From positions 186,001 through 250,000 of the IMG/VR virus record IMGVR_UViG_3300036853_000446: a stretch of 64,000 nucleotides of DNA. One strand, written 5' to 3'. The notes under the pieces are model-generated. The model saw nothing but the letters and a program-made list of their open reading frames with translations. It was not told where the DNA came from and ran no database searches. Made by a program: the position numbers and the translations under genes. Of this stretch, positions 2,498 through 61,697 are shown one piece after another (position 1 is the first letter of the stretch; every line of letters starts with the position of its first letter).

Positions 2498-3880
2498 TCA
2501 GTGATTCCTGAACTGCCAATCTTGGACAATGGCACCCTCAGCCGGCAATGGCCTTTCTTTCCAATCGGCGATGAGCCTCTCGAGCGGTTTAATATCCGAG
2601 GCCATCGACTTGATCATGTCGGGAAACTTACGCTTTGCAGTTTCAACGCCCTTATTCCACCCGCGGTCACCAAGCCTGACGAGCGAGCGAACATCGCCGG
2701 GCACCACAAAAAGGATATCGAGAGTTCCAGCATCAATCTGAGCCAGTAACTCTCGAAGCTTCTCCTGTTGCAAGATGAGGACTTTCACGAGGTGCTTGGT
2801 CCCTTCGGGGGATAACTCAAACGGCGGAAAGCCCGCACTAATGCAGTTGCCCTGGATGCTTCCCCACCCCGGTCGGGTGAAGCCATGATTCACTACGGTC
2901 GGGAGACCTCCCGACGCTTTCAGCTTGACGTTACGGAAGCATCCTCCACATGACCCAGTGTTGTTCCTGGTCCGTTGTGCGCCCGGCTGATGCTCCTCCA
3001 TTCCGAGAGCATCGAGTACCTGTTTACTGAAGCTCGTCTCCTTTTTAAGCCAAGTGACGTAACCGAAGCTCCGAATAAACTTGGTAGCTGGCTTGGGTCC
3101 AAGCTTTGCCAAGTTACGGAAATCTCCTTGTTTGATCGACCGCCGCCACACATTATGCTCAGGTAGGACCTCGAATGTCTTGCCCTCAGGCGACGTTATT
3201 CTGAAGCCGGCGGCGCCGACCCACAACTTGAACTCGAATCCCGTCGCTTCGGGTCCCGCACCGGGAGCCGCACGAACGTCGGTGATATCCATGACGTAAA
3301 TTGCATCCGCGCGGGGCGAGACGGGCAGGCTCGCTACTTCATGCTTTCTCGCGTACGCATGCAATTCGGCCACTTCGGCAGCCACTTTTGACACAAAATC
3401 GGTTTCGTACAGAACATGTACGATTCCGATGCACGGTTCTATGTTCCAACCCCCGAGATGGTCGAGAACCTTCTTTAGCTTGCCGATGCTTTCGATCGGG
3501 GTCGTCACACCCTTACGGAGCTTCAGCAGGATGGCCTCCATGTCGTCGGCAGCCTGGATGTACTGCTCGGCGACGCGGGCCCCGATGAGATCGATGGACT
3601 TCTTGTTCATGGGCATCCAATTCGCACATTTCAGGTAGCGCACGGCGAGCCGTGTTGCGAGCGGAGCCCGTCGGATCTTGAAGAGGGCGATCGTCTTGGT
3701 CTTGTGGGGGCTCTTGTTGAGAGGCTGCAGCTCGACCAACGGGTTACCTCTACCATCGTCATGGAAGGCAACTATTTTTGCGGGCACATTGAGGAATTTG
3801 CCCATCATCACCAAATCCCCGACGTTGAAAAACGCGGCGGCGATGCCCCGGCCATTCTTTTGCTGCCTTGCAGTCCGCAT
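2498..3880 (-). CDS. Leader-bearing protein with two RVA-x-x-Y motifs and C-terminal Cys/His (Zn-binding-like) domain
   Basis: ATRLAVRYLKCA and GARVAEQYIQAA; GSCGGC...NHGFTRPGWG..GNC. Confidence 0.75.
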   Translation of the reverse strand: MRTARQQKNGRGIAAAFFNVGDLVMMGKFLNVPAKIVAFHDDGRGNPLVELQPLNKSPHKTKTIALFKIRRAPLATRLAVRYLKCANWMPMNKKSIDLIGARVAEQYIQAADDMEAILLKLRKGVTTPIESIGKLKKVLDHLGGWNIEPCIGIVHVLYETDFVSKVAAEVAELHAYARKHEVASLPVSPRADAIYVMDITDVRAAPGAGPEATGFEFKLWVGAAGFRITSPEGKTFEVLPEHNVWRRSIKQGDFRNLAKLGPKPATKFIRSFGYVTWLKKETSFSKQVLDALGMEEHQPGAQRTRNNTGSCGGCFRNVKLKASGGLPTVVNHGFTRPGWGSIQGNCISAGFPPFELSPEGTKHLVKVLILQQEKLRELLAQIDAGTLDILFVVPGDVRSLVRLGDRGWNKGVETAKRKFPDMIKSMASDIKPLERLIADWKERPLPAEGAIVQDWQFRNH

Positions 3881-3948
3881 TGCATTCGGGCCGGGCCAAA
3901 AGTAAATCCGCGAGAATGAGGCACTCGCGACCCCCAACGGTCGTCACC

Positions 3949-4290
3949 ATGCGAATGATCCAGAATCCCGACGTCTGGCGCGAAGCGAACATCTCGGCGC
4001 TCGACGGTGTCGATCCTGATGTCTACGACCGAATCCGGTCGACCCCCGGGGCCCACCCCGATGACCTCCTCGATCAACGAGGCGTTCACGTCAAAGCCGT
4101 CTTCGAAACGAAGCGCTACAGTTTTGTGCACTTCGGAGTCCTCATCAAATTCAGGGGCGCTCCGTTGCATTGGCGTACGCCGGGCTACGAAACGGTCGCC
4201 GACGAGGTCGTAGTCGTCTCGACCACGGATAAAGAGACCGTCTGGTTTGGCAGCGTCGAGCAGTACCTCGAGATGTGGTGCGCCGATTGA
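3949..4290 (+). CDS. Hypothetical protein
   Basis: Clean ORF divergent from 2498..3880. Confidence 0.6.
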   Translation: MRMIQNPDVWREANISALDGVDPDVYDRIRSTPGAHPDDLLDQRGVHVKAVFETKRYSFVHFGVLIKFRGAPLHWRTPGYETVADEVVVVSTTDKETVWFGSVEQYLEMWCAD

Positions 4291-4307
4291 CGGTGTAAGA
4301 GCGGACG

Positions 4308-4601
4308 GTGATGGGGTCCATCGTCGTCGTTCACCAACTCGAAGGTGGCTACCGCAGACGGTGGGTCTTCGAGTGGCACGGCCGAGACGTCGTCCTCTTG
4401 CGCTACCACCTCGAGCGTCGCGAGGGCAAAGGCCACCGACTCGTCGAATTCTTCGACGGCCAGGATGCCGGCGACTACGGCAACTGGAAATGGCTCGAGG
4501 AGTCCGAAGTGCCCTGGGACGAGGAGCTTCAGGGTGAGGTCGGACTGGCCATCATCAGCAGGCTACGGATCAGAAGGCCGAGCGAGAGCCGCGACGGCTA
4601 G
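4308..4601 (+). CDS. Hypothetical protein
   Basis: CGGTGTA at 4291-4297, 10 nt before the GTG. Confidence 0.65.
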   Translation: MMGSIVVVHQLEGGYRRRWVFEWHGRDVVLLRYHLERREGKGHRLVEFFDGQDAGDYGNWKWLEESEVPWDEELQGEVGLAIISRLRIRRPSESRDG

Positions 4602-4626
4602 AGTTCTTATCAAGGTCACCCATCGT

Positions 4627-5615: not shown

Positions 5616-5975
5616 TTATTTCTTGACCTTGAATTCGTATCGACCGCGGCCGGCCCATTCGATCCAGTGGACCTCTGCGGCGGTTTGCGTTTTGCCGTCG
5701 TCGTATCTGACGTTGGCATTGCCTTTCCATTTCGTCCATTCATTGGCTTCCCCACCGTACTTGGCAGCCTTCTACGCGGCGTCTCTAAAGGGCTTGATTT
5801 CTTCGCGATGAGTGACCTTGCTTGTGACGATAAAGCCTCTTGGTTTTCCGTGGGCAAGCTCGCCGCGATACTGCTTAGGTGGTTTGGGTCGCTTCGTTTT
5901 CGGGTCATCGGAGGGATCTTGCGCGGCGAGAAATCTCTTTGTAACGCGGTACGCGAGATTGTCATAACGTCTCAC
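5616..5975 (-). pseudogene. Leader-bearing putative nuclease toxin (MuF C-terminal type) interrupted by in-frame TAG at 5772-5774
   Basis: Reading through the TAG gives ...RVTKRFLAA...FRDAA*KAAKYGGEANEWTKWKG..AEVHWIEWAGRGRYEFKVKK*. Confidence 0.7.
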
Positions 5976-5983
5976 ACAACGGA

Positions 5984-5991
5984 CGCATCAA
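5984..5991 (-). promoter_or_regulatory. TTGATGCG motif upstream of leader-bearing gene
   Basis: Identical 8-mer at 53538-53545 and 56374-56381, also upstream of leader genes. Confidence 0.55.
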
Positions 5992-6753: not shown

Positions 6754-7128
6754 TCACGCACTCTTCTTCGCGCGTTTCTTTGTTGCCGTGCGACTCGCCA
6801 TGGGTCCACGTTCCAGAGCTTCGGGCGTAGGACGGGTGAAGAGAAATTCTGCTACGATGACACGAAGTAGCGCGTGGAGCGTTATCATGCGATGAGAAGC
6901 CTCGGCTTCGAGTTGATCCCACACATCGTTGGTGAATCGGAGCGATCGAGTCGAGGTACCAATCGCCTTGTTTCCCTTCGGCGGCCGTCCACGGACTGCT
7001 CGTGTGAACGCCAGAGCGTTTGCACGGCCCTCAACCCCGTGCCCGAAGGTGCGCGTGGCGTCCCCTTCGTTATCGGCCTGCAACGCTTCTAGTCGCTTTG
7101 CGGTGGGATCCTTGTCATCAACCTTCAT
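6754..7128 (-). CDS. BrnA-like/RHH antitoxin
   Basis: RGRPPKG..TRSLRFTNDVW..L RHH-like C-terminus; overlaps the BrnT stop. Confidence 0.75.
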   Translation of the reverse strand: MKVDDKDPTAKRLEALQADNEGDATRTFGHGVEGRANALAFTRAVRGRPPKGNKAIGTSTRSLRFTNDVWDQLEAEASHRMITLHALLRVIVAEFLFTRPTPEALERGPMASRTATKKRAKKSA

Positions 7129-7384
7129 AACGTTTCCTTTGCGAGGGCGTGGCAACCCACGCGGTGATGATCTCAGCGTGTTCGTTGTCGACAATCTCGA
7201 CCGTGACGACATACAGCAGCCTTTCGTGGTCTGAGTACCCGATGAAGTTCATCCGCTCGGGGTGACGCAAATTTGGCTCGAAGTAGACGTCCGGATCGTT
7301 GTACGCGGTCTCGGCTTCCTCGAATGAAACGCCGTGCTTGCTGAGGTGCTCAGCCGCGTTCTGCTCATCCCAAGTAAACTTCAC
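7118..7384 (-). CDS. brnT: BrnT family toxin
   Basis: FTWDEQN..HLSKHGVSFEEA..ERMNFIGYS..LLYVVTVE..IITAW. Confidence 0.85.
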   Translation of the reverse strand: MKFTWDEQNAAEHLSKHGVSFEEAETAYNDPDVYFEPNLRHPERMNFIGYSDHERLLYVVTVEIVDNEHAEIITAWVATPSQRKRYEG

Positions 7385-7685
7385 ATTAAAGAGTAACACT
7401 AATTATCGTGGAGAGCAACGTCCGAAGCCAAACGGGCACGAACAGGCCGCCCGGGCCCGAGAGTCCGGTATGCAAGTGCTTGAAATCGTTATATAGAAAG
7501 CGGCAGAAAGGCATAGTCCGCTTCCGACGGGAGTTTCCGACATCTTGGGCCAAAGAGGCCCGTTGGCCTGATTGGGGCCATCGGGGGCCAACCCGAGCGC
7601 GGACGGTTTGGAAGCGACTGACGAACTCGTTGAAGGTCCGCGTTACTCAACTGTCCAATGGATCGACCCGGTGTATTCCCCGGGC

Positions 7686-19522: not shown

Positions 19523-19708
19523 TCAATCCGAGCTGTCCGGTGGCCCGTCGTCCTCTATGCTCACCGAGCCCGTCAAGAATGAGTGCTCGACTGAAGCCTC
19601 GCATTTTTCGCAGACATAGGTGATCGAGGTGACCCGCGGGACGTCGAGCTTGACCTCGTGTCCACACTTCGGGCAAACGAGTTGAGCGGGCCGCAACGAG
19701 TCGCTCAC
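19523..19708 (-). CDS. Zn-ribbon protein
   Basis: CPKCG..CEKC. Confidence 0.6.
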   Translation of the reverse strand: MSDSLRPAQLVCPKCGHEVKLDVPRVTSITYVCEKCEASVEHSFLTGSVSIEDDGPPDSSD

Positions 19709-20856
19709 AGAATGGCCTCGAGCATCGCAACCTGGTCGTCCGGCAAGAGGTCCTCGCAGTAATATGCGATCATCTCGGCGAAGTTCTCTTCGGGAGTCGT
19801 TGCGGCGTACGGCGAAACGAAGACGCTGGTTTCCGGATGCTTCTGCCCAATGAAGGCACCGAGATCCATATGCGCGCCGCGGCTGGGGTCAGCCTCCCGC
19901 GCCAGCTCTACGACGGGGCTCTTTCCCTTGTAGCTCACGCCCTTGACGACGTAGGTAACACCGTTCTCCGTGATGGTTTCGCCCCCACTAGGCCATTTGC
20001 TTCGATCCTTCAGCAGGTCGAGGTCTGCCCTCTGCTTCTTATGCGCCAACTGGCTATAAAGGCCGTGGATCTCGCTATTCTTGCTCTGAAGGAACTTCTT
20101 GTGGAGGCGATGACCCAGTTCGTGCGTCACGCTCAGCACTGCCGGTCCCTGCTTGCCCTTCAGGTTGGCCCGGATGTAGAGGGTGTCGTCGCTTGGCCGG
20201 TAGAAGGCCAGCACGCGCGTCGATCTGCCCACCGAGTTGGTAACCTGGATGCTACCGTAGCAGATACGGGCGAGTCCCTTGCTATGCAGCAGCTTGACGG
20301 ATTTCTCGACAACTTTGGCGACGTCTGCCATCGCCGCAGGAGCGAAGCCGCCGGTATTGATCAGCTGGAAGGGTCCCGCCTCGAGGACCGTGTCTCCGCC
20401 CTCTTCAGAGTGTTTGCTCCCACTCGTCAAAACGCGACGGACGGTCGCCGCGAAAAGTCTATATTCATCGAGCGTCTTGATGAAGACCTCGACCGCCTTG
20501 TCCTCCTTGATGCGGTTGACCTTTGATTTGGCAAATGTCTTGGCGGCACGCTCGACAATCTTGCGATCCTTCGGAACCATCGCGTACTCGCGAAGAACGT
20601 CCAAGAACATTTCGTAAGCGCCATGCCTCCGCATGTAGTCGAACACACCTTGAATGACGGCCCCAAGTCTGAGGCGGTCGTACACGTCCTTGGGATCCCG
20701 GGCCCTCTCTTCGTGCTTCGCTAAGCCTTCGACAAAGGCTTCGAACTGACGGAGAAGCTGCAGCGTATCGCCCGCCACTTTGTGGCGGCGGTCATAGTCA
20801 TAGACGGGCTGACGACGTTCATAGCTCCAAGGCACCACGTCCAAGGCCGCTGACAA
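19705..20856 (-). CDS. Leader-bearing zincin metallopeptidase
   Basis: WSYERR..YDYDRRHKVAG leader; THELGHRLH and SPYAATTPEENFAEM. Confidence 0.8.
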   Translation of the reverse strand: MSAALDVVPWSYERRQPVYDYDRRHKVAGDTLQLLRQFEAFVEGLAKHEERARDPKDVYDRLRLGAVIQGVFDYMRRHGAYEMFLDVLREYAMVPKDRKIVERAAKTFAKSKVNRIKEDKAVEVFIKTLDEYRLFAATVRRVLTSGSKHSEEGGDTVLEAGPFQLINTGGFAPAAMADVAKVVEKSVKLLHSKGLARICYGSIQVTNSVGRSTRVLAFYRPSDDTLYIRANLKGKQGPAVLSVTHELGHRLHKKFLQSKNSEIHGLYSQLAHKKQRADLDLLKDRSKWPSGGETITENGVTYVVKGVSYKGKSPVVELAREADPSRGAHMDLGAFIGQKHPETSVFVSPYAATTPEENFAEMIAYYCEDLLPDDQVAMLEAIL

Positions 20857-23661: not shown

Positions 23662-23741
23662 CGGAGATTCGCTTACACCGGTAAATCTCCTCGAGCGTCG
23701 CGTCCGGATCAAAACCCGTGTGTGGCCCGTATTCGGCATTG

Positions 23742-24623
23742 ATGATGAAGGATTATGCAATCCAGCGCCCGGGCAAAGAACAGAAGGGGCGATCGTTCCG
23801 AGCCACCTGTGTTGCCGTTGCGACGGCCAACAGCCTTTGGGATGAGGGGGGCAAGGATGGCGCGATCCGGCCCGTCTGGGCGATGTTTGCGGGGACCGAA
23901 CAAGAGCTGCGCCCATTTGTGGCCAACCTCAAATCGGGGCGTAAAGCCGAACCCGCCGAGCAATTTTGGAGGGGCGGCGACAATGAGCGCTTCGAGTTTC
24001 TGCGCTCCGTCGGATTCGTCGCGTCCTGGCAGCGGGAAGCCGAGGGCTCCCTCGTGACGCTGTTTCATCCGGAACTCTTTCGACTCGATCCGGGGCTCAT
24101 CGAACCCTCCACTATTCGTTTCCTCCTGTTCGTTCCATCGGATTGGTCGGACGCGCAGCGGGTCGACGTCGCTAGTGCCGTTCGACACGTGCAACCGTTG
24201 GCGCCAAAGCTCGAGGAAGGTTACCTTTCCAGTCTGGTCCCGACGGCCTACCTCTTTGCTGCCTATCTCGACCGGCGCACGCGCGCGCCTCTGGTGGCCG
24301 ACGGCCGCTTCTACCTGCAGCTACTCCTGTCGGCTCTCGACCAGGGGCTCGCGTCTCTCCCGGGGAGAGACATCAAATACAACCGTTCCTCCCGTGACCA
24401 GTGGGGATTTCACAATGGTCACGGCTTCGATTTCGAGATGGGTGGCTCGAGCTGGAGTCCGCTCGGAATCGACTCCATCGGGCTCGCGCACGTGATCTCT
24501 TTCAACTCGACGCACACCGTTTTCGAACAGTTCCTCGCCGAGCAAGTGACCCAATATTTCGCCCGCGTGAAGGGCAAGACGCGGCGCGGGAAGATTGACC
24601 TTTCCGCCTTTGCCGCCGGTTGA
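23742..24623 (+). CDS. Hypothetical protein upstream of the MTase-helicase
   Basis: 293 aa ORF divergent from rtcB. Confidence 0.7.
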   Translation: MMKDYAIQRPGKEQKGRSFRATCVAVATANSLWDEGGKDGAIRPVWAMFAGTEQELRPFVANLKSGRKAEPAEQFWRGGDNERFEFLRSVGFVASWQREAEGSLVTLFHPELFRLDPGLIEPSTIRFLLFVPSDWSDAQRVDVASAVRHVQPLAPKLEEGYLSSLVPTAYLFAAYLDRRTRAPLVADGRFYLQLLLSALDQGLASLPGRDIKYNRSSRDQWGFHNGHGFDFEMGGSSWSPLGIDSIGLAHVISFNSTHTVFEQFLAEQVTQYFARVKGKTRRGKIDLSAFAAG

Positions 24624-24663
24624 TTCCGGATCAAATCCCAACTCTGACCCGTACTACTTTCAA

Positions 24664-27600
24664 ATGGCGAGACCAGAATCGATCGCGGTGGGAGGATTTT
24701 TTCCGACCCCCTCACATCTCATCCCCCTGATCGCTCGACACCTTTCGGTGGGCGATGGGGGCCGCATCTACTACGCCGACCCGTGCGCGGGCGACGGCGC
24801 TGCCATCTACGGCTTACATGAGGCGATGGGTAGTTCCGCGGAGGTCTTCTCGTGCGAGATGGAGGCCGAGCGCCATACGGGTCTCCTGGCTCGCGCCAAC
24901 CTCGACGGTTACAATGCGGCGCAGCGGACGTTGCACGGCGACGCCTTCCGGATCGAGATGTCCGCGGCCATCGGCTGCCTGCTCCTGAATCCCCCCTACG
25001 ACCTCGACTCGGTGCACGGTCGGCTCGAGCAGCGCTTTCTGGAGCGCTTCACGACCGCGCTTTGTGACGGCGGCGTGGTCGTCTTCATCGTTCCCCACTA
25101 TGCGCTCGCGGCATCGGCCAAGACTCTCGCGACCACGTTCGACAACGTCGAATGCTTCCGCTTCCCGAAAGAGGATTTCGCGGCCTTCAAGCAGGTCGTC
25201 GTGTTCGCGTCGAAAACCAAACCGCGACTGTCGCCTGACGCGCTCATCTTGGCGCGAGTCAACGGCTGGGCCAAGACTGTCGCCCGGTGCCCGATCCTGG
25301 GCTCGAAAGAAGACACGCACGAGCTTCACGGCACACACAGCACGCTGACCTGGCAGCTGCGCGAATTTGACCTGAAGGGCCTCATCAGCAAGGCTCGCCC
25401 GTGGCGCGAGTCCCGGTCCAAAGGGGTGGCCGGTGTCCTCACGGTGGTCCCCCACATCCTGCCCGAGATCCCGGTCGAAGACCTGCTGTTCCGTACCTAT
25501 CGGGTTGCAACGGCACCCCGCCCGGCGCACATCGCCGCCGGTATCGCGAGCGGCCTCTTCAACGGACGCGAAGTCTCGAGCGCGACGCCGGGCATGCCGA
25601 ACCTGCTCGTCAAGGGCGTGTTCACTCGCGAGTACGTCACGATCCAGGAGAACGTCAACAGCAAGGGCGAAATCACGGGCGTCACGCAAGTACAGCAACC
25701 CAAGCTCGAAACGACCGTGCTCGACCTTTCGACGAAACGCTACTCGCTGCTCAAACCCGCGGGTTCGGCGACGACATCCGGGATCGACGGGATGGGTATC
25801 GAGGGCCTGCTCGAGCACTACGGGCCGAGCCTCATGAACGTGATGGCGGAGCAGTGCCCGGTCACCTACGACCCGAAGCGCGACGCGACCGGGCTCAGGC
25901 TGGCTCCTGTCGGCCGCCCCCTGTTCCGGGCTCACGAGCACGCAGCCAAGGCCCTGCTGATGTTGCTCGGGGGTCAGGACCTCACCCCGAGCGAACGCAA
26001 AGGCAAGGCCGCCATTCTTCTCGGCGAGATTGGATCGGGGAAGACGGCCACGGTGCTCGCCCTCGGTCAGACGATCGCCAAATGCATCCTGGTGCTCTGC
26101 CCGCCCCACCTACTCGACTCGTGGAAGAACGAGACGAGGGTCGTGCTGCCCGGTGCGGACGTGCGGATCCTGAGTGACCTGAACGACGTCGACGCCCTGG
26201 CCCGTGACCTGGAGCTGCCGAGCGATCGGACCGTCATCGCGGTCCTCTCTCGTGAGGACGGCAAGCTCGGCCACGGCATGGCGGCCGTCGAATACCTGGG
26301 CTGTTGTCCGAAATGCGGCGCGCCCCTGCCCGAAGGAGACCTCGCCAAGAAGCGCGCTCATTGCGACGCCAAGCCCCTGACCTTGGCAGACGACCTGGCA
26401 CGGGCGGCCTTCACGCTCGCTCTCCACGTGGCCCCTCAGGCCCCAGAGGACGGCAACGTCCGGGCCCTTCTCGCCGGGCGTCACCTCGGCCGGTATCTCG
26501 TGAGCCTCGAGGGCCAAAAGAAACGCGCCAAGTGGTCGGGGTTCGATCCCCATTGGGTCCTCACGACGATCGCCACCGTCGTCCAGCGCCTGACGAGCCG
26601 CTTCGATAAGGGCCACGCCGAGTTGCTCGGCGCGCTACTGATGGCCGACTACGACCCGGAGCAGATCGCCACTCTCGCCCGCAAATTCTCCGGCAGCACG
26701 AGCTACGAGCAGCAGGGCCTCGCGCGGGCCCTCACGTGTCTTCTCCCGTTCGGTGGCGAGCTACAAAACGAAGTCCAAAAAGAAACCTACGCGAGCAACG
26801 GCGGCTTCTCTCATTACAAATTCGCGTCGGACGCCGAAACTTTGCGGGAGAAGGGTTTGAGTACGACGATTGGAACGATCGCGCTCGGGGGCGGCCAACT
26901 CCGCCTCAACGACGCCGCGCACGGGTCGGCCAAACTCGCCCTTGGCATTCTGACCCAGCTCGCGGTTCTCGGAAGCTTTCCGCGGGCTAAAGAAGAGTGC
27001 GGCGAAGCACTGTACCAAGCCACCCCGCGGCCTCGTCGGTACCCACTGGCGAAATACATCGCGCGGCGACACCCGAACCTTTTCGACCTCCTCTTGATCG
27101 ACGAGGCCCATGAAAACCAGAACGCCGATTCGGCCCAAAGTAATAGTGCGCACCGTCTGACGGGGCTTGGAATCCCATTCGTGCTCATGACGGGCTCGCT
27201 CATGAACGGCTATGCCGAGTCACTCTTCACGAACATTTGGGCGGTCTCGCCTGACTTCCGCGACGAGTTTAGGCACGACGAAAAGCAGAGATTCAACGAG
27301 CGCTACGGCTACAGCAAACGGATCCTCACGGACAAGGACCGCGAGACCAAAAAAATTGTCTCGTTCGGCACCCAATCCGACCGAGTCGAGCGCGGCGCGA
27401 AGACCGCGGGCAAAGCTCCGGGCCTCCTACCTCTCTTTCTTTTCCGCCACCTGCTCGCGTACGCCGTCACCCTACATAAGGCCGACCTCGCGCTCGATCT
27501 TCCCAAGTGCGCGCACTTTCGACACGAAATCGAGCCGAACGCGACGCAGACCAAAAACTACAAGAGCCTGTTGCGTGCACTGAAGGCGCGGATCAGCCAG

Positions 27601-36845: not shown

Positions 36846-37163
36846 ATGAGTTACTCGTACGATCGCACGGCCGCTCGCGGGACACAGGCTCTCGACTACC
36901 TCAACCTCCCGACCGCAGCCAGTAACGCCCTCTGGGCTCTCGATGAGAAGTTCATCGGGACCGAAAACTACATGGGCGTAGCGTACTTCTGGAGCCTCGA
37001 GTACAAGTGGTGGCTGCGCGATGCGTCGCCGAAGGTGCGCCGAGCGGTCCACGAAGCGTTCCGCAAGGCACGGCTGTCGCCCGAGGACGACAGCGCCGAG
37101 CACGCGGCAATCGTCGCGAAGTTCTTTCCGGACGCCAAGGTCTTTTATGACCGTGGTGTGTAG
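36846..37163 (+). CDS. Leader-bearing small protein
   Basis: MSYSYDRTAA leader. Confidence 0.7.
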   Translation: MSYSYDRTAARGTQALDYLNLPTAASNALWALDEKFIGTENYMGVAYFWSLEYKWWLRDASPKVRRAVHEAFRKARLSPEDDSAEHAAIVAKFFPDAKVFYDRGV

Positions 37164-40530: not shown

Positions 40531-42165
40531 TCAGCGTTCGAAAACCGACGCGAACGACTCGAGCTGATCGCGCGTGATGTCGAACTCGAGGACGTAGTGG
40601 GCAAACGCTTCGGCGAAAGCCTCGTCGATGTTGGTTTTGCCGTAGGCGGAGACGGGAACGACGGGGGCGGGATTGTCGACGTAGGAACTGAGCCACTCGG
40701 GGCCGCCCTCGAGCCCCGATAGCTGCTCGTCGGCGACGGCGTTGAAGGCTTTGGCGGCGGCGTCGACCCAGGCGTGCGCCGCCGTGACGACGTCTATCGC
40801 GCCCTGATCGATTGCCGCGCGATCCTGACGGTCGATCGCCTTTCCGAGTTGGCGTTCCGCCTGGCCGAGTGGCAGGTCGTATTCGTTGTGGAGATCGATC
40901 GCCGGTCCGCTCAAAACCTTCGTGTCGTCGACGAGCGAGGTGAAGCGCCGGAGATCCTTCGTCAGACCCTCGAGCGCCGCAGCCATGGCGCGGAGGAGCC
41001 CGGCAGGGTTCGAGGAGGACTCGAGCTTGTCGATGAGGGGATGAAAGCGGTCGGCGAAGCGGTCGACCGCGTGGTGGCCGCTCGCAATGTCCCGGTTGGT
41101 GAAATGCATGACCTTCAAGTGCCGCGGGGCGCCCTCGGGTTGATGCACGGTGTGGACCTTGACGAGGGTCGAAAAGCGCCCGCGCTGCTCCTGGGACATG
41201 CTTTTGAACCAGTACCGGTGCCCTAACTCGTGGATGATCGCGTAGACGGCGCGCGCGCTCGGCTTCGTGTAGAGCCGGACCGTATCGGGGCCCATACGAT
41301 AGGCCCCACCGGCGCCTTTATCGCAGTCCCGACAGATGAAGAGGATGCCGTACCAGGCGGTCTTCAGGTGCTTCTGAGCGAGCGCGCGGTAGGCCTCGAG
41401 CACGTTCTTCATGTAGGGTTCGATGTCCTTTTCCGCCGTTGCGCTCTCGAAGACGACGCGGAGCCCGGCAACGTCAAAAGTAGTGAAGGGCTCCGGCGCC
41501 CACGCACGCGAGAGTGACTCGAAAATCGTGTCGACCCAACCGACGGGGCTCCAGGTCCCTTTGGCTTTGACGACGGCCTTCGGGGCCACGGCCTTGACTG
41601 TCGTCACGAGGTCACGGGGGGAATCGGTGGGCCTCGCCTTCTCGAGGACCTTCTCGGCGGCGCGCGTCACGACGTCGTCAGCGACCGAGTACGTCGTTTT
41701 AAAGAGATCGCCGACCGTCTTGACCGAGGTTTCAACACGATAGACGCAAGCCCAGCCGGCGGCGTGACGGAGCTGTTCGGCGACGCCCCTCGAGTCGGGG
41801 TCGAAAATGTAACGGTTGCGGAAGGACTCGAGGTTCCACCAGGGGATGAGCGAGAGGCGGAGGCTCCGCTTGGCTTCACGGACCGCCGGGGCGACGGCGT
41901 CCGCGTGAGTTGGAGCGACCTTGGCAAAATCGCGCTCAAAGTCGTCGAAGAACGCGGTCAAGGAGGCTTCGACCTTGCCACTCCAGAACTGGAGGCCGCC
42001 GTCGAGGGGCTCTTTCAGGATCGCCCGTAGCTCGCCGGCCTTGGCCTTGAACCATTTTGCCGGGATTGAGGCAGCGATCCGCGTTCGGCGGAGCGCGAGC
42101 CGGATGAAATACCGAAGAGCCACCTGCTCGGACGTGTGGACGATCGATCTCCGCGAGGTTCTCAT
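40531..42165 (-). CDS. Leader-bearing zincin metallopeptidase
   Basis: EQVALRYF..RIAA leader; IHELGHRYW and SAYGKTNIDEAFAEAF. Confidence 0.8.
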   Translation of the reverse strand: MRTSRRSIVHTSEQVALRYFIRLALRRTRIAASIPAKWFKAKAGELRAILKEPLDGGLQFWSGKVEASLTAFFDDFERDFAKVAPTHADAVAPAVREAKRSLRLSLIPWWNLESFRNRYIFDPDSRGVAEQLRHAAGWACVYRVETSVKTVGDLFKTTYSVADDVVTRAAEKVLEKARPTDSPRDLVTTVKAVAPKAVVKAKGTWSPVGWVDTIFESLSRAWAPEPFTTFDVAGLRVVFESATAEKDIEPYMKNVLEAYRALAQKHLKTAWYGILFICRDCDKGAGGAYRMGPDTVRLYTKPSARAVYAIIHELGHRYWFKSMSQEQRGRFSTLVKVHTVHQPEGAPRHLKVMHFTNRDIASGHHAVDRFADRFHPLIDKLESSSNPAGLLRAMAAALEGLTKDLRRFTSLVDDTKVLSGPAIDLHNEYDLPLGQAERQLGKAIDRQDRAAIDQGAIDVVTAAHAWVDAAAKAFNAVADEQLSGLEGGPEWLSSYVDNPAPVVPVSAYGKTNIDEAFAEAFAHYVLEFDITRDQLESFASVFER

Positions 42166-42984: not shown

Positions 42985-43773
42985 TCAGGTCTTTGCTTTC
43001 AGGTCGACCTTGACCGACTCCCATGAGCCATCGTCCCAGTATTTGCACCATTCGATGAGCTGGACCCGCACGACCTCATGCTTGTTTAGGTAAAGCTCCC
43101 GCTCCTCTTCGTACTCGGGCAGTACCATGAACTGAGCCGGTATATAGTTGCGCCGCTGATCGTCGCGCCGAATCACGCCGCTCAGGATGATGGGCAGTTG
43201 ATTACCCTCAGGCGCATGCGAACCTCCGGCGTATGCCCGAAGCGTGGTGCGGTTGTCAGGGCTGGTCCAGCTTGCCCCCAACCCCTGTCGCGTGATGACC
43301 TTCCAGATGGCAGCCCCGAGGGCGCTCGGCTTGTCTCGTAACTCGGCGAGATTCGGAACCTCGATGCGCATACCCCGGGCGATGGCTCGGGGCGTCGGCT
43401 GACAGACATGAGCCCCCGAGACCCAATCGTCCTTTTCGATGAGCCCATTGATGCTCGGAGCATCGGACACGAAGAAAAGCTTCAGCCGGGGATCTTCATC
43501 GAGCGTCCAGGTGCGGCCACGAGGCGTCGACCTGATGACGAACTTCTTGTCACATTTTACGCATTTGGTGATCCACCCGGGGTCACTCTTGTTGACCTTC
43601 CACTGGATGAGGTCGTGACCACGGGCTTCCGCGTCCCCGTGCCACCGCTTGGCTAAGGCTTCGATGTCAGGAGACGGAAAGCCATTTCTCGGACCTTTGA
43701 AGCTCGCGATGACCAAGGCTCCTTGTCGGGTGCTCGAATAACGGGCGGCGACTCGGCGTGCAATGCGGCTCAC
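42985..43773 (-). CDS. Leader-bearing ADP-ribosyltransferase-like protein
   Basis: MSRIARRVAARY leader; IARG, GLGASWTS, YEEERE (R-S-E pattern). Confidence 0.6.
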   Translation of the reverse strand: MSRIARRVAARYSSTRQGALVIASFKGPRNGFPSPDIEALAKRWHGDAEARGHDLIQWKVNKSDPGWITKCVKCDKKFVIRSTPRGRTWTLDEDPRLKLFFVSDAPSINGLIEKDDWVSGAHVCQPTPRAIARGMRIEVPNLAELRDKPSALGAAIWKVITRQGLGASWTSPDNRTTLRAYAGGSHAPEGNQLPIILSGVIRRDDQRRNYIPAQFMVLPEYEEERELYLNKHEVVRVQLIEWCKYWDDGSWESVKVDLKAKT

Positions 43774-52760: not shown

Positions 52761-53507
52761 CTAGCCACGATCTCGATCCGACTTCGCTTCTTCCTTACGG
52801 TATTTGTCTCGATCCTTCTCGTAACGCTCCTGCGCCTTGTCTCTCGCGTCCTCGAGCGCATCCGTGTGGACGTGCTTTGCACCTTGGGAAGTCATATGTG
52901 CCGCGAAGTCAGCCATGTCCGGGCCCCCGGATTTGAACTCCACTTCAAAGACATCGTCACCCGATTGGCAGCTCATGACGCCGTTGCCGCTGGTATCCGT
53001 GTTTAGGTTGAACTTCATCTTCGATATGGGCTTCTTCTTGTCCGTGCCTTGGGTATGCAGCAGCCGCTCCACGTCCTTTTCACTGATTTTCGAGGCATCC
53101 CCGCCGCGCGCCAAAGCACGATTGACCCCTTCGTGGTCCTGCTTGTCGCGAAGCTTGTTCAGCTCGGCTTTCGTGGCCTTCTGACCCCCCGGCTTGGCTT
53201 CATCCTTCGGCTTCTTCTTACCCTCATCCTTGCCGTCGCCCTTCTCCCCCTTGGGCGCGTCCCCCTTCGTCTCCTTCGTCTTGACCTTGTGCTTCGAGTG
53301 GTCCGCTTTCGGATGTTCGTGAAGGTATTTCTCGAGCGCTTCCGGTGAGGAATGCTCCATGGACGTCACGGAACGCCGTGCAACGCGCTCGGCCAGGTCA
53401 TTCAGAGCCGACGCGACCCGCACTCGAGAAGGGGCCTCGCTTCGCGCGTAGGCTAGGAGAGCCCGAAGCTCGTGTCGTAGATCTCGAGGGGAAGCGATCT
53501 TGTTCAT
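52761..53507 (-). CDS. Leader-bearing charged protein (KIAS family)
   Basis: MNKIASPRDLRHELRALLAYARSEAPSRVRVASALNDLAERVA. Confidence 0.75.
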   Translation of the reverse strand: MNKIASPRDLRHELRALLAYARSEAPSRVRVASALNDLAERVARRSVTSMEHSSPEALEKYLHEHPKADHSKHKVKTKETKGDAPKGEKGDGKDEGKKKPKDEAKPGGQKATKAELNKLRDKQDHEGVNRALARGGDASKISEKDVERLLHTQGTDKKKPISKMKFNLNTDTSGNGVMSCQSGDDVFEVEFKSGGPDMADFAAHMTSQGAKHVHTDALEDARDKAQERYEKDRDKYRKEEAKSDRDRG

Positions 53508-53609
53508 GGTGGGGAAGTCCTTTTCTCGTACAACCGGCGCATCAATGGATTTGGCAACGCGATCCAGAGCTAACCAGGGCACGGATCAAACCGTTGGGCT
53601 CGCCCGTAC

Positions 53610-54722: not shown

Positions 54723-54953
54723 ATGGCACCAAAAAAGCCCATCGTAGCGGGCAACTCCCTCGCCGTCGTTCTCGACAAGGCCGTCCTCGAGGCGACGGGC
54801 ATCACGCGGGAGACCGTCCTCGAGGTCTCGACCGACGGTGACGTCGTCGTGCTCTCCCCCGTGCGCTCACCGGCGCGGTCCGCCCGTCTGGCAGCCATCG
54901 CCGACGGCGTTTTCACACGTCATGCGGGGGCGTTCCGCAAGCTCGCCGAATGA
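54723..54953 (+). CDS. AbrB/MazE-type antitoxin
   Basis: GNSLAVVLDK..LEVSTDGDVVVLSPV. Confidence 0.85.
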   Translation: MAPKKPIVAGNSLAVVLDKAVLEATGITRETVLEVSTDGDVVVLSPVRSPARSARLAAIADGVFTRHAGAFRKLAE

Positions 54954-55372
54954 CCGAGTTCCTCACCCTCGATGAGGTCCTCGCTTTGCACTCGGGATCG
55001 ATCGCGCGCTTCGGAGGCGACCCTGGGATCAAGGACATCGGTCTCCTCGAGTCCGCTCTCGCCATGCCTCAGGCTTCTTTCGACGGCGTCGATCTCCACG
55101 AGACGCTCTCCGAGAAGGCCGCCGCGTATCTCTTCCATGTCGTCAAAAACCACGCCTTCGTTGACGGCAACAAGCGCACGGGGCTCGCCGTTGCGCTCGT
55201 CTTCCTCGAGCTAAACGGCTTCCGCTGGGAGGCTTCCGACTCCGATCTCATCGCCCTCACGCTCTCGGTAGCGTCGGGCGCCCGTAGTAAGGCCGCCGTG
55301 GCGGTAACGATCGCCGAAGGGCTCGTCCCGCTCCCGCCCCCCTTTCCCCCTAGGACCACAACCCCAAAATGA
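54950..55372 (+). CDS. doc: Doc/Fic toxin
   Basis: KNHAFVDGNKRTG. Confidence 0.9.
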   Translation: MTEFLTLDEVLALHSGSIARFGGDPGIKDIGLLESALAMPQASFDGVDLHETLSEKAAAYLFHVVKNHAFVDGNKRTGLAVALVFLELNGFRWEASDSDLIALTLSVASGARSKAAVAVTIAEGLVPLPPPFPPRTTTPK

Positions 55373-55965: not shown

Positions 55966-56346
55966 TCAAATCAAACGCAAGTCCCTTTCAATCATGAATC
56001 CGAAATGAAGGACGGTGTCTTGGACATGACGTCGGTGCTTGGCCCATTGTCTCTCCAAATCCCTGTCACCACCCTTGGCCTTGGCGGCATTCTCGAGTTC
56101 CTTTACCAATACCTCAGCTTTTGTGGCAGCGTCCAAGGCTGATTTCAGGTGCTTCTTCAGCGCACTCAGCTGGGCCTTGTTCTCGGAATCAAAAGCCCCA
56201 GCCTCCTTGACGAGCCCTAACCCTTCGCTCAAGGTCTGAAGCTCACTTGCAATCCGTACACGTGATGGGCGCCCACCCTCCGTGTAGGCAATGAGACGCC
56301 GAAGCTCATGCTGTAGCTCTTGGGGGGACGCGATCTTGTTCATCAT
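55966..56346 (-). CDS. Leader-bearing small protein (KIAS family)
   Basis: MNKIASPQELQHELRRLIAYTEGGRPSRVRIASEL..VKEAG. Confidence 0.75.
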   Translation of the reverse strand: MMNKIASPQELQHELRRLIAYTEGGRPSRVRIASELQTLSEGLGLVKEAGAFDSENKAQLSALKKHLKSALDAATKAEVLVKELENAAKAKGGDRDLERQWAKHRRHVQDTVLHFGFMIERDLRLI

Positions 56347-56456
56347 GGGTGAAGGCCTTTCGCCTCACGTCGGCGCATCAACGGATTCTTGGGTGTGGGC
56401 CCCGTGGAATCGCGCAGTCCCGCACTCGCTCCCACGGGCTCGGTGTAGCTCATGAC

Positions 56457-58629: not shown

Positions 58630-58986
58630 TTACAACCGCGCTAGCGAAGCCTTGAGAATCGTTTTGGCTGCGGCCTCGGCTTGTGCCTTGGCGTCATCTC
58701 GACTCTTCGCTTCGCCATCCTTTAGGGCTTTTACCGTCGTTCCCCCTTTTGCCTCTACGCCATACACCACCCACGCATCATCGTGTGCAACCAGTGAGAG
58801 CGAACCCAGATTCGCGACATCTTTTGCCTTTAGCACGGGTTCCCATATCGACGTGGCGGCGACCCGGCGACTGAGTTCGAGAAGGCTTCGGCTCAGAGCA
58901 ACTCGCGAGGGTTGGTGACCTCCCGCGTGATCGAGCAGCTGAAGCAGCTCATGCTGAAGGTCGTTGGTCGTTGCGATTTTGCGCAT
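58630..58986 (-). CDS. Leader-bearing small protein (KIAS family)
   Basis: MRKIATTNDLQHELLQLLDHAGGHQPSRVALSRSLLELSRRVAA. Confidence 0.75.
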   Translation of the reverse strand: MRKIATTNDLQHELLQLLDHAGGHQPSRVALSRSLLELSRRVAATSIWEPVLKAKDVANLGSLSLVAHDDAWVVYGVEAKGGTTVKALKDGEAKSRDDAKAQAEAAAKTILKASLARL

Positions 58987-59687: not shown

Positions 59688-59853
59688 AGTAAATCGAGGG
59701 ATAGGTAAATGTTGATAATCATTGATGCTTATTCCCTCGTACGGTCAGGTTTGGCAATGTCCGAACGATGGTCAGTGGACAACTGAGCTTAGATCGGATC
59801 ACGGCCGCTCGTACACGGCCCTCGTACTTTTATAAACCAGGCGCGGCATCGAT

Positions 59854-60639
59854 TCAGACGAGCCGCTTCATCGCCTCGTATTTTTCGGGCGCGCGACGTT
59901 TCAGATCGGCGGGCTCCTCCACATAGGAGCGAAAGGTTTCGGCGAAATCTTCGATGTTCGGCCTAAACTCGGCGTAGTCGGAAATGAATGGCGGCTGTCC
60001 CCAGGGCGGTGCGAACAGGTCGACGTGGTGCTTCTCTTCGAGCGCATGTCCTAGCTCATGCGTGACAGTACTCACGAGAATAGAGACCGAGGGCGGCTTA
60101 CGGTCGTGCACCGATAGGCTCAGGACGCCGCCTAGGTCCCACGAGGCATCTTCGGTTCCCCGCGGTGGTTGCAAGTTGATCGTCCGGGCTTCCCCTTGGA
60201 AGATGGCCTTCGCAACCGGTTTGAGCTTCCCGAACGCTTTCTTCCACGCTTCGACGTACGCTCCCCCGTGTTCGAGCAATTCGAGGGACCCTCTGTACAC
60301 GACGTTCTTACCGGTTGCCGCCCGTAACGCGAGACAAGTCTCCTCGAACGATGCGGAGGGTTTCTTCCTCACCACACGCGCGGGTTTGACCGCATCGATC
60401 TTGTCCAAATCCTCGTCGAACACGCCGCGCGCTTGGAGCCAGGCCCGAAGCTCCGCCACTGGAAAGGGCAGCATACTCCCGATATCGAGTGCGCCACGCA
60501 GGCGCTTCAGCACAGAGAGACCGTTCGTGCTCCACTCCCGTACCTTCAATAACCGATCGACATATTCGATCGTGACCAGGGCGTCAGCGGCTCCTTCGAG
60601 GTATCGGGCAGCAACACGGAGGGCGAGGCGACGGTCCAC
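59854..60639 (-). CDS. Leader-bearing zincin metallopeptidase
   Basis: LALRVAARYLEGAA leader; THELGHALE and SDYAEFRPNIEDFAETF. Confidence 0.8.
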   Translation of the reverse strand: MDRRLALRVAARYLEGAADALVTIEYVDRLLKVREWSTNGLSVLKRLRGALDIGSMLPFPVAELRAWLQARGVFDEDLDKIDAVKPARVVRKKPSASFEETCLALRAATGKNVVYRGSLELLEHGGAYVEAWKKAFGKLKPVAKAIFQGEARTINLQPPRGTEDASWDLGGVLSLSVHDRKPPSVSILVSTVTHELGHALEEKHHVDLFAPPWGQPPFISDYAEFRPNIEDFAETFRSYVEEPADLKRRAPEKYEAMKRLV

Positions 60640-60949
60640 CTCCGACCGGAGCCCATGAATGAATTACCGTCGGGCAAGGCAGCAGCACCCCTGGTCGCCC
60701 CGTGGTGAGGCGTGGCCCTTCCCACGTCCCGAGCGACCTTCCACTAACCCGGGGCCCTCTCTAGCCCGTGCAGAGCCCGTCCTGTTGCAGACCGGCGGTC
60801 GTCCCTCGGATCAAACGTGCCGCGCCGCCCGTACTCTCGGTTGACTTTGAGCTTTCCTCAAGTCAGTTTAGGAGCGACAAGATGGCTCGCGTCATCCACT
60901 CCTGCTCCCCCAAAACCAATTCCCCTCGAACCGCGGTACACTCACCCAC

Positions 60950-61201
60950 ATGGCGCAATCCTCCAAAGCCTCGCTCCCGGTCGACCTTCTCGAGAAGGCT
61001 CTCGGTCTCTCTCCCGATGCGCGCTTGGCGCTGGCCACCGAGCTATTGGACAGCGTCGAAGGGTCCGACCCCGCTTGGGAGCAGGCTTGGAGTCGCGAAC
61101 TCGATCGCCGTGCCGCCGAGGCCGACGCTCATCCCGAGCAGGGAATTCCGTGGTCCGTGGCGCGCGCCCAACTCGAAGCCCTCGTCAGCCCGAAACCGTG
61201 A
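60950..61201 (+). CDS. Addiction-module antitoxin (TIGR02574-like); partner toxin truncated
   Basis: ALGLSPDARLALATELLDS..AWSRELDRR..IPWSV. Confidence 0.85.
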   Translation: MAQSSKASLPVDLLEKALGLSPDARLALATELLDSVEGSDPAWEQAWSRELDRRAAEADAHPEQGIPWSVARAQLEALVSPKP

Positions 61202-61271
61202 AGCCCATCGTTTGATGGCTTTGAGTAGGTCTCGGATAACGGGAACCTTCTTGTGCGTGGCCAATTTGAAG

Positions 61272-61697
61272 ATGGAGTACTCATACGACCGACGCATGCA
61301 CGCTGCAAACTCCGGCGACGACGCTGAAGACGACGCCGACAAGCTCACCGACTTGCAGGGGCTGATCGCGGACGCATTGACAGCGGCTCGAGCGACGGCG
61401 GATGAGCTGGACAAGAGCACAGATTCCGATGCTCTGGACGCACCGCTCAAGCTCGCGAAAGAGCTATGCAGTGACTTCAGCTCGGCGGAAACGTGCGAAA
61501 CAGTCGCCGACTATCTGGCCAATATTCGGGCTGCGAAAACCAATGTCGGGAAGCTCGAGGCTGCGCTGAAGTTGGCCAAGAAGAGCGCCAAACGAGAAGA
61601 CGACGCCGAAGCGCTCGAAGCGCTCGAGGATGCCAGCGACGAGCTGAAAACCGTAAAGCGCGAGCTGCATGACATCGAGGGCGAGATCGATGGCTAG
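61272..61697 (+). CDS. Leader-bearing acidic helical protein
   Basis: MEYSYDRRMHAA leader. Confidence 0.7.
   Translation: MEYSYDRRMHAANSGDDAEDDADKLTDLQGLIADALTAARATADELDKSTDSDALDAPLKLAKELCSDFSSAETCETVADYLANIRAAKTNVGKLEAALKLAKKSAKREDDAEALEALEDASDELKTVKRELHDIEGEIDG

What the first reader, a model, noticed from the sequence alone, without database searches (positions are those of the whole stretch)
2498..61697. Dispersed family of effector genes sharing short N-terminal leaders: candidate virion-cargo addressing system
Seen: 11 scattered genes with unrelated bodies begin with one of three leaders. (A) RVA-x-R-[YF]..AA: 2498..3880 (ATRLAVRYLKCA, ARVAEQYIQAA), 5616..5975 (AYRVTKRFLAA), 40531..42165 (EQVALRYF..RIAA), 42985..43773 (ARRVAARY), 59854..60639 (ALRVAARYLEGAA). 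(B) KIAS-P-x-[DE]-L-x-HEL...PSRV: 52761..53507, 55966..56346, 58630..58986. (C) Y[SD]YDR..A[AG]: 19705..20856, 36846..37163, 61272..61697. Leaders typically end in AA/AG/CA. Nine of the 11 are on the minus strand and several look more A/T-rich than their neighbours. Cargo: three zincins, an ART-like domain, a nuclease-type toxin and unknowns. Known precedent: T4 internal proteins and Alt carry N-terminal capsid-targeting sequences removed by the prohead protease. Inference: these are interchangeable head-packaged, injected effectors addressed by short tags, a polymorphic-toxin-like system whose trafficking domain is only a 10-45 aa peptide.
Basis: partly seen in the sequence, partly recalled or inferred. 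Interest (0 to 1): 0.85.

Follow-up and report, generated by a model that had tools for sequence, protein, structure and literature searches.

The report
Portable terminal tags on phage effectors
A 407-kb uncultured huge phage, and several other uncultured phage contigs, attach the same short helical peptides to the ends of otherwise unrelated enzymes, mostly zinc peptidases; these look like an addressing system, but its destination (probably the phage head) is still unproven.

Summary
The motifs are real and not due to chance. Classes A (RVAxR[YF]L..AA) and C (YxY[DN]R..AA) recur in orthologues and in unrelated proteins of at least six other metagenomic phage contigs. One of these is a complete 485-kb huge-phage genome.

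They are not strictly N-terminal leaders. The same peptide is found at N-termini, at C-termini, in tandem, and between the domains of multi-domain ("polyvalent"-type) proteins. Within one cargo family the tag sits at either end, and one zincin family carries class C in the window but class A in a relative. AlphaFold models the tags as low-confidence helices beside confident domains.

Cargo is mainly zincin peptidases, plus a C39-like peptidase, InPase, topoisomerase IB, DUF3072, a large fold-unknown family and small proteins. The ART and nuclease labels are not supported.

Class B is different. It is a 45-residue N-terminal domain shared by three neighbouring paralogues, and I found no relatives elsewhere.

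Best reading: these are portable docking helices that recruit effector modules to a common phage receptor, most plausibly the procapsid. Neither packaging nor cleavage could be tested. None of the tagged proteins matched a known head or tail family.

The parts
60586..60627 (-). Class A tag (LALRVAARYLEGAA), 7 residues after the GTG start of the 261-aa zincin 59854..60639
   Evidence: It is the best PSSM score in the window, 32.4 bits.
59854..60639 (-). Zincin peptidase cargo (HELGH at 60034-60060, followed by EDFAE)
43732..43764 (-). Class A tag (IARRVAARYSS) at the N-terminus of the 262-aa protein 42985..43773, whose function is unknown
   Evidence: Orthologues P0173 (two tandem tags) and P0174 keep the tag. 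The public gene call P0172 starts after the tag.
42070..42132 (-). Class A tag plus a second degenerate element (QVALRYF...RIAA) at the N-terminus of the 544-aa zincin 40531..42165
   Evidence: all 11 homologues keep RV[AV]xR[YF], and some carry it twice. In the AF2 model the helix at residues 12-23 has pLDDT below 50, while the body scores 80-95.
40531..42165 (-). Zincin peptidase cargo (HELGHRYWF at 41206-41232; EAFAEAF near the C-terminus)
5922..5957 (-). Class A tag (LAYRVTKRFLAA) at the start of the ORF 5616..5975, which is broken by a TAG at 5772-5774
   Evidence: Neither piece has a Pfam hit.
3623..3658 (-). Class A tag copy 1 (ATRLAVRYLKCA). It is internal, following the N-terminal barrel of the 2498..3880 protein.
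   Evidence: In the AF2 model the helix at residues 74-87 has pLDDT 46-73.
3548..3583 (-). Class A tag copy 2 (GARVAEQYIQAA), immediately before the body of the 2498..3880 protein
   Evidence: In the AF2 model the helix at residues 93-110 has pLDDT 65-67.
3674..3832 (-). Tudor/KOW-like beta-barrel ('FNVGD' domain) that is fused directly to a tag in three genomes
   Evidence: alignment with L005 6079-6378 and L006 5020-5334. AF2 strands at residues 23-65 have pLDDT 87-92. Foldseek matches Tudor, chromo-barrel and KOW domains at E 0.02-0.1.
2498..3547 (-). Body of a large fold-unknown family (LLKLRKG...; C-x2-C...HG-x-x-RPG-x-G; WK-x-RPLP)
   Evidence: 908 relatives at E<=1e-3. pLDDT is above 90, and there is no PDB match for the body. 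PHROG 28271, function unknown.
20770..20829 (-). Two tandem class C motifs (WSYERR, then YDYDRR..AG) at the N-terminus of the 383-aa zincin 19705..20856
   Evidence: The homologous zincin in LR745208.1 carries two class A tags instead.
36846..36875 (+). Class C tag (MSYSYDRTAA) on the 105-aa protein 36846..37163
61272..61307 (+). Class C tag (MEYSYDRRMHAA) on the 141-aa acidic helical protein 61272..61697
53373..53507 (-). Class B N-terminal domain (45 aa) of 52761..53507. It ends in an A-like ERVARR element (PSSM 13.8).
56218..56346 (-). Class B N-terminal domain of 55966..56346
   Evidence: No homologue other than itself was found.
58852..58986 (-). Class B N-terminal domain of 58630..58986
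   Evidence: The pattern scan of IMG/VR finds only these three copies.

Best explanation
Classes A and C are portable docking peptides. Each is a 10-15-residue amphipathic helix with conserved Arg and aromatic positions, followed by Ala-Ala, and it sits directly against the boundary of a folded module. Its role is to recruit that module, usually a zincin peptidase or another polyvalent-protein-type enzyme, to a common phage-encoded receptor. It works from either end of the protein, and copies in tandem would add avidity.

The most likely receptor is an internal component of the procapsid (scaffold/core, capsid interior or portal). On that reading the tagged enzymes are co-packaged and injected with the DNA. 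This would be the multi-gene equivalent of a polyvalent protein.

Shown: the tags exist, are selected as peptides, are position-independent, swap between cargo families and between classes, and lie outside the folded domains.

Inferred: that they bind a common receptor, that the receptor is in the head, and whether they are ever removed.

Class B is a separate matter. It is a small local paralogue family that shares a 45-aa helical N-domain.
For: Recurrence:
- All homologues of the 544-aa zincin keep the tag.
- The orthologues of 42985..43773 keep it.
- Unrelated proteins in L005, L006, L011, L012 and LR745208.1 carry tag A or C.

Position independence:
- Among the 150 best relatives of the 2498 protein, strict tag density is 3.87 per 1000 aa in the first 50 residues, 1.71 in the last 35, and 0.26 elsewhere.
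- All 11 of the internal hits lie at domain junctions.
- P0082 and P0087 carry tags at both ends.
- L012 6814-8730 has three tags in tandem.
- The L006 polyvalent protein reads zincin, tag-like, zincin, tag, topoisomerase IB, tag.

Class swap: the window zincin 19705 carries class C, while its LR745208.1 homologue carries two class A tags.

Structure: the tags are modelled as helices of pLDDT below 50 to 73, next to domains above 90.

Cargo: the repertoire (MPTase-like zincins, C39, InPase PF18823, ParB-like, topoisomerase IB) matches the polyvalent proteins that Iyer et al. propose are delivered with the DNA (PMC5512222).

Precedents for peptide-directed head packaging: the T4 CTS and the 30 N-terminal residues of P1 DarB (PMC9024508).

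Context: related contigs are phages, with baseplate, DNA polymerase and a terminase-like hit.
Against: - There is no direct evidence of packaging.
- None of the 8 tagged proteins of the complete genome LR745208.1 hits a head or packaging family, and no recognisable protease, scaffold or capsid protein carries the tag.
- Tagged genes sit in accessory or replication-proximal regions, not in structural modules.
- The receptor is unidentified. A BLAST comparison of the window with six other tag-bearing loci found no conserved untagged partner.
- The DarB-like 1254-aa protein of the window is untagged.
- No cultured phage with tags was found, so no virion proteome can be consulted.
Confidence: 0.4

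Rival explanations
1. The tags are processing or recognition sites. They would mark module boundaries that the co-encoded zincin or C39 peptidases, or a prohead protease, recognise and cut. This would release domains from polyvalent precursors and trim stand-alone proteins.
For: - In multi-domain proteins the tags lie exactly at domain junctions.
- Peptidases are the commonest tagged cargo, as expected if a protease is flanked by its own sites.
- Iyer et al. propose autoprocessing of polyvalent proteins by their MPTase domains.
- The conserved Ala-Ala after the motif could be a scissile site.
Against: - A pure cleavage site has no reason to be conserved at the extreme end of single-domain proteins, yet it is conserved there in orthologues at 37-72% identity.
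- The motif is long and helical, unlike the 3-residue sites of the T4 and phiKZ proteases.
- Tandem copies are not needed for cutting.
Confidence: 0.2
2. The tags dock to a hub that has nothing to do with the virion. Possibilities are tag-tag or tag-barrel association that assembles separate modules into a non-covalent 'polyvalent' complex, or recruitment to a chaperone, an AAA+ unfoldase/protease, or an intracellular phage compartment.
For: - The motif is position-independent, multivalent and amphipathic.
- A Tudor/KOW-like barrel, a peptide-binding fold, is fused directly to a tag in three genomes, and also in P0015, P0018, P0156 and P0157.
- No structural protein is tagged.
Against: - No conserved candidate hub was found.
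- The barrel is absent from several tag-bearing loci.
- The cargo is of the effector or counter-defence type, not replication machinery, which argues against a replication-compartment import signal.
Confidence: 0.2
3. The elements are conjugative plasmids or ICEs, and the tags are type IV secretion translocation signals.
For: The neighbourhoods contain PcfJ, DUF932, DUF3072 and DUF6094-SNF2, all of which are common on conjugative elements.
Against: - The window contig is a 407-kb IMG/VR viral contig.
- Related tag-bearing contigs encode baseplate wedge/J, DNA polymerase, homing endonucleases and a terminase-like protein.
- There is no plasmid match.
- No T4SS genes were seen.
Confidence: 0.04
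4. The conserved peptides are by-products of conserved DNA, such as recombination junctions for cassette exchange, or shared promoter and 5' regions.
For: - The genes are mosaic and lower in G+C.
- Three of them share an upstream CCNTTGATGCGYC.
Against: - Tag codons differ at most third positions, so the DNA lacks the long identical runs that recombination would need.
- Upstream regions share no motif across the set.
- The tags are conserved across genomes of 54-65% G+C.
Confidence: 0.03
5. The tags are Tat- or Sec-type export signals. The core xRF[LI] resembles the Tat S/T-R-R-x-F-L-K motif.
For: Some copies read RR[VI]AxRF.
Against: - No hydrophobic h-region follows the motif.
- Many copies are C-terminal or internal.
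- The two arginines are normally four residues apart.
Confidence: 0.01

Closest known systems
[quoted passage not shown]
   Same: Both are short peptides that are sufficient to address unrelated proteins. The cargo consists of injected counter-defence or host-modifying enzymes (PMC9024508; PMC5512222).
   Different: - The T4 and P1 signals are strictly N-terminal.
- The T4 signal is removed by the prohead protease.
- P1 Dar proteins share no consensus.
- Here the motif is sequence-defined, shared across distant genomes, works at N-terminal, C-terminal and internal positions, and is often tandem.
- Packaging is unproven here.
Encapsulin cargo-loading peptides and bacterial-microcompartment encapsulation peptides
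   Same: They are terminal, about 10-20 residues long, and placed on unrelated cargo beside a folded domain. They occur at either terminus or between domains and are sometimes repeated. Encapsulin shells are HK97-fold capsid relatives (my own knowledge of the field).
   Different: - The consensus is different.
- No shell gene has been linked to the tags.
- The context is a lytic-type huge phage rather than a cellular compartment operon.
Polyvalent proteins of phages and conjugative elements (Iyer, Burroughs, Anand, de Souza, Aravind 2017)
   Same: The domain repertoire is the same: zincin MPTases, papain-like or C39 peptidases, InPase, ParB-like domains and a methylase-helicase neighbour. Some tag-bearing proteins are true polyvalent fusions (L006 6558-9620, P0009, P0087).
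   Different: In the window the modules are separate genes, each with its own tag. The passages of that paper I text-searched for motif, cleavage and packaging terms mention no boundary motif; I did not read the whole paper.
Polymorphic toxin systems (pre-toxin boundary motifs such as VENN or DPxGL)
   Same: A conserved short motif demarcates exchangeable modules.
   Different: - There is no large trafficking or repeat domain and no adjacent immunity genes.
- The motif is not conserved at the DNA level.
- It is found at both ends of the modules.

Membership tests
T4-type capsid targeting sequence | Located at the extreme N-terminus of the precursor | tested here: not met
   The tags also occur at C-termini, in tandem and between domains.
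T4-type capsid targeting sequence | Removed by the prohead protease at a defined site | not testable with these tools
   The conserved Ala-Ala after the motif is compatible with a cleavage site, but there are no proteomic data.
T4-type capsid targeting sequence | Cargo is present in virions and injected | not testable with these tools
   No cultured phage with tags was found.
Encapsulin / BMC-type cargo-loading peptide | Short terminal peptide on unrelated cargo, lying outside the folded domain | tested here: met
   Terminal densities of 3.87 and 1.71 per 1000 aa against 0.26 internally. The helices are modelled at low pLDDT beside confident domains.
Encapsulin / BMC-type cargo-loading peptide | Genetic linkage of the cargo to the shell gene whose interior binds the peptide | tested here: not met
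   No capsid-like or shell gene lies next to tagged genes in the window, L005, L006, L011, L012 or LR745208.1.
Polyvalent-protein effector repertoire (Iyer et al. 2017) | Domains such as zincin MPTase, InPase, ParB-like and peptidases, encoded by phages or conjugative elements | tested here: met
   HExxH...ExFAE zincins. InPase PF18823 in P0078 at 32.5 bits (cutoff 26.8) and in P0082 at 25.6 bits, just below cutoff. A C39-like peptidase at E 4e-4, below cutoff. A zincin-zincin-topoisomerase IB fusion.
Polyvalent-protein effector repertoire (Iyer et al. 2017) | Two to fifteen effector domains in one polypeptide | tested here: not met
   The window proteins are single-module, except 2498..3880 (barrel plus body). 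Only some relatives are fused.
Tat signal peptide | Twin-arginine motif followed by a hydrophobic h-region and an AxA site, N-terminal only | tested here: not met
   There is no h-region, and there are C-terminal and internal copies.
Polymorphic toxin system | A large N-terminal trafficking region, a variable C-terminal toxin and an adjacent immunity gene | tested here: not met
   There is no trafficking domain, no toxin domain is recognised, and no immunity pairing is seen.
Class B as a member of the same tag system | Recurrence on unrelated cargo in other genomes | tested here: not met
   Only three adjacent paralogues carry it. There are no other copies in IMG/VR or in 5.8 billion proteins.

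The most novel reading that the evidence does not exclude
A clade-spanning, sequence-defined cargo address code exists in huge phages. Two interchangeable terminal helices (RVAxRFLxAA and YxYDRxAA) would load any protein carrying them, at either end, into the capsid for injection. Separate small genes would then replace giant polyvalent proteins. If true, the injected effector set of uncultured huge phages could be read directly from sequence.
Probability: 0.3. Interest if true: 0.85.

Novelty: new variant of a known kind. Interest (0 to 1): 0.72.

Why it matters
If the tags are address labels, they give a sequence rule for listing the delivered or co-assembled effector proteins of uncultured huge phages. 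Most of that cargo, including a family of about 900 members with no known fold, has no annotation at present.

They would also be a ready-made short tag that works at either terminus, useful for loading foreign proteins into large capsids.

Even if the destination is not the head, the finding is still informative. A conserved motif that marks the module boundaries of polyvalent-type proteins makes it possible to test how those proteins are assembled, processed or delivered.

Tried and rejected
1. A megablast of 10 kb against GenBank phages and a tblastn against plasmids found nothing. The origin was instead found through IMG/VR.
It returned mostly out-of-frame matches and an unrelated family of about 410 aa, with only one plausible new tag (L105). 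It is not useful for estimating prevalence.
3. A tblastn with a triple tag against phages gave only chance-level hits.
4. The cultured-phage relatives of the 2498 family that I inspected (RsoM2USA, Mx1) carry no tags, so no virion proteome is available. The other hits (Serratia phages, Gurke, Rctr197k) were not inspected.
5. Walking the 93.9-kb phage contig from the baseplate outwards reached fibre-like genes and then metabolic genes, not the head module.
6. Pfam, PHROGs, ESM Atlas and Foldseek gave no function for 42985, the B proteins, the C proteins or the 2498 body.
7. No promoter is shared by the eleven genes. TTGATGCGCC is not enriched.
8. The chance explanation is rejected. The DNA-repeat explanation is rejected.
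9. A search for a conserved untagged partner across tag-bearing loci found none.

Full report
**Origin and setting.**
The window is part of IMGVR_UViG_3300036853_000446, a 407,634-bp viral contig. It covers about positions 186,004-250,003 in the same orientation. It has 61% G+C and small genes on both strands.

It carries the accessory repertoire typical of huge phages: IF-1, GroES, CsrA, dCTP deaminase, RtcB, NUDIX, Dam, PcfJ, Doc, BrnT, MotA/ExbB, DUF3072, and a 1254-aa DUF6094 methylase plus SNF2 helicase of the P1 DarB type. There are no structural genes and no tRNA genes in the window.

There is no near match in GenBank phages or in plasmids.

**The observation.**

Classes C and B have 3 hits each, all at ORF starts.
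- Shuffling residues within the 106 called proteins gives expectations of 0.52 (A), 0.07 (strict A), 0.007 (C) and 0 (B), against 6, 4, 3 and 3 observed.
- Because the regexes were fitted to the hits, I rely on independent recurrence in other genomes (next section).
- Codons in the tags differ at most synonymous positions, so the peptide is what is conserved, not the DNA.
- The tagged genes are lower in G+C (0.585 against 0.615, p=0.002). Nine of the eleven are on the minus strand (p=0.03).

- In 2498..3880 the two A motifs sit at residues about 75-110, behind an N-terminal barrel.
- 5616..5975 is broken by a TAG at 5772-5774.
- 19705..20856 has two tandem C motifs.
- The ART-like and nuclease-toxin labels find no support.

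**Recurrence elsewhere.**
- The 544-aa zincin has 11 homologues at 26-72% identity in other metagenomic contigs. Every one of them keeps RV[AV]xR[YF] near its N-terminus, and some carry it twice.
- Two paralogues elsewhere on the same contig (L002) also end in a similar motif.
- Orthologues of 42985..43773 keep the tag. One of them has two copies.
- In L006 (a 117-kb contig) class A is at the N-terminus of a 104-aa barrel protein and at the C-terminus of a 418-aa DUF3072 protein. It also lies between the second zincin and the topoisomerase IB domain, and at the C-terminus, of a 1020-aa zincin-zincin-topoisomerase IB protein. Class C starts a 119-aa protein there.
- In L005, which holds a 72%-identical zincin orthologue, class C starts two small proteins.
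- In L011 class C starts a 92-aa protein, and class A both starts and divides a body-topoisomerase IB fusion. In L012 a 638-aa protein has three tags in tandem, and P0087 has tags at both ends.

**The large family as a natural experiment.**
An exhaustive search with the 2498..3880 protein found 908 relatives, 83 of them below 1e-30. I examined the 150 best.

- The strict motif R[VI][AV]xR[YFW] occurs 29 times in the first 50 residues, 9 times in the last 35, and 11 times elsewhere. That is 3.87, 1.71 and 0.26 per 1000 residues.
- All 11 internal copies lie at junctions with an extra domain (DUF3072, barrel, InPase, topoisomerase IB or unknown).
- Class C variants occur at N-termini (P0046, P0157) and at the very C-terminus (P0114).
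- Members of one cargo family therefore wear the tag at either end, or not at all.
- The window zincin 19705 (class C) is homologous to a zincin of LR745208.1 that carries two class A tags. The two classes are therefore exchangeable.

The consensus from 48 distinct copies is [LI]-A-x-R-V-A-x-R-[FY]-[LA]-A-A. This is an amphipathic helix.

**Structure.**
- The AlphaFold2 model of the zincin (14-sequence alignment, mean pLDDT 78) puts the tag in a helix at residues 12-23 with pLDDT below 50, ahead of a confident helical bundle and catalytic domain. Foldseek gives only weak gluzincin matches.
- The model of the 2498 protein (68 sequences, mean pLDDT 88) shows a beta-barrel at residues 23-65, two tag helices at 74-87 and 93-110 with pLDDT 46-73, and a body above 90.
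- The barrel matches Tudor, chromo-barrel and KOW folds. The body matches nothing in the PDB.
- The barrel is fused directly to a tag in three genomes and in further family members.

**A complete related genome.**
LR745208.1 is a 485,034-bp uncultured phage. It shares the zincin family, the 2498 family and the DarB-like gene. It also shares gene order with the L012 phage: replicative helicase, methylases, DNA polymerase, tagged protein, homing endonucleases, baseplate.

I read the whole genome and scanned it.

- The generalised core [VIL][AV]xR[FYW][LIVM] has 20 hits in ORFs of 100 aa or more. Eight of them are within 30 residues of the first start.
- The eight tagged proteins are three zincin-like peptidases, a C39-like peptidase with a C-terminal tag, a 454-aa protein with two tags, and three small proteins.
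- None of the eight matches a PHROG of any category, head and tail included.
- In the related 93.9-kb phage, the baseplate and fibre proteins have no terminal tags.

**Class B.**
The three proteins share a 45-residue N-terminal helical domain (17 invariant columns in the whole-protein alignment, 15 of them in this domain) and little else. They lie within 6.3 kb of each other. No other copy was found in IMG/VR or in 5.8 billion proteins. The domain of 52761 ends in an A-like ERVARR element (PSSM 13.8), but this is weak. I treat B as a local paralogue family.

**Interpretation.**
A leader in the T4 sense is N-terminal and is cut off. P1 DarB likewise uses its first 30 residues.

Here the same peptide works from either end, is repeated, and persists between fused domains. 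That anatomy fits docking peptides such as encapsulin or microcompartment cargo tags. It also overlaps with what a processing-site motif would look like.

The cargo list is that of polyvalent proteins, which Iyer et al. argue are delivered with the DNA and perhaps self-processed by their zincins.

My weighting is as follows:
- Docking tags that recruit effector modules to a common receptor, most likely inside the procapsid: about 0.4 for the full statement, and about 0.75 for the docking-tag part alone.
- Processing sites: 0.2.
- A hub that is not in the virion, including tag-barrel or tag-tag assembly: 0.2.
- Conjugation signals, DNA junctions and Tat signals are minor or rejected.

**Limits.**
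- Only about 100 kb of the 407-kb contig could be read.
- The head module of no tag-bearing phage was identified.
- No cultured phage with tags was found.
- Contact maps from the models are not available, so I could not test whether a tag packs on the barrel.

Noticed in passing
window 5616..5975 (-), stop at 5772-5774: The tagged ORF is interrupted by an in-frame TAG. The window has no tRNA genes, and neither piece has a Pfam match. It is either a pseudogene or two short ORFs. Recoding was not tested.
   Followed up: partly
window 23718..24623 (+) and 24595..28359 (+): A DarB-like DUF6094 methylase plus SNF2 helicase (1254 aa) has a conserved 301-aa upstream partner. The pair is also present in LR745208.1 (about 110,987-118,940) and in L008. 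Neither protein carries a tag, although P1 DarB is a head-packaged protein.
   Followed up: partly
window 53536-53545, 56372-56381, 5982-5991 (-): CCNTTGATGCG(C/T)C lies 25-40 nt upstream of the starts of B1, B2 and the 5616..5975 gene. The 10-mer is not enriched in the window overall (8 hits with one mismatch against 5.7 expected).
   Followed up: partly
window 42985..43773 (-): The public gene call for this protein (P0172, 243 aa) starts at an internal TTG after the tag. Conservation of the tag in orthologues P0173 and P0174 supports the upstream GTG start at 43773.
   Followed up: yes
window 2498..3880 (-) versus L006 5020-5334 and 5315-6571: The window protein is a fusion of two genes that are adjacent and separate in L006: a tagged barrel protein, then a DUF3072-plus-body protein with a C-terminal tag. 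The tags sit at the fusion point.
   Followed up: yes
window: tagged genes overall: The tagged genes are lower in G+C than their neighbours: 9 of 11 are below their 3-kb flanks, and 55966..56346 and 5616..5975 are in the lowest 1-2% of genes. This suggests recent acquisition or fast turnover.
   Followed up: partly
L105 338-871 (-) and 1736-2347 (+): An unrelated IMG/VR contig has a 203-aa protein starting MEARMSKHTNRVAARYIKRAAS, a plausible class A tag, next to a GroEL gene. A neighbouring protein starts MDLKSELVRLAHEVPETRKHILPLL, a helix-Pro-helix N-terminus reminiscent of class B.
   Followed up: no
window 7118..7399 (-), 54950..55372 (+); L005 6932-7327, 14801-15136: Toxin-antitoxin-type genes (BrnT, Fic/Doc, PemK) are scattered among the tagged genes, both in the window and in its close relative.
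   Followed up: no
LR745208.1 276345-277997 (L145 26345-27997, -): The N-terminal four-helix bundle of the tagged zincin gives a sub-threshold Pfam hit to the encapsulin IMEF cargo Flp family (E 0.013, 15.7 bits against a cutoff of 27). This is probably chance.
   Followed up: no
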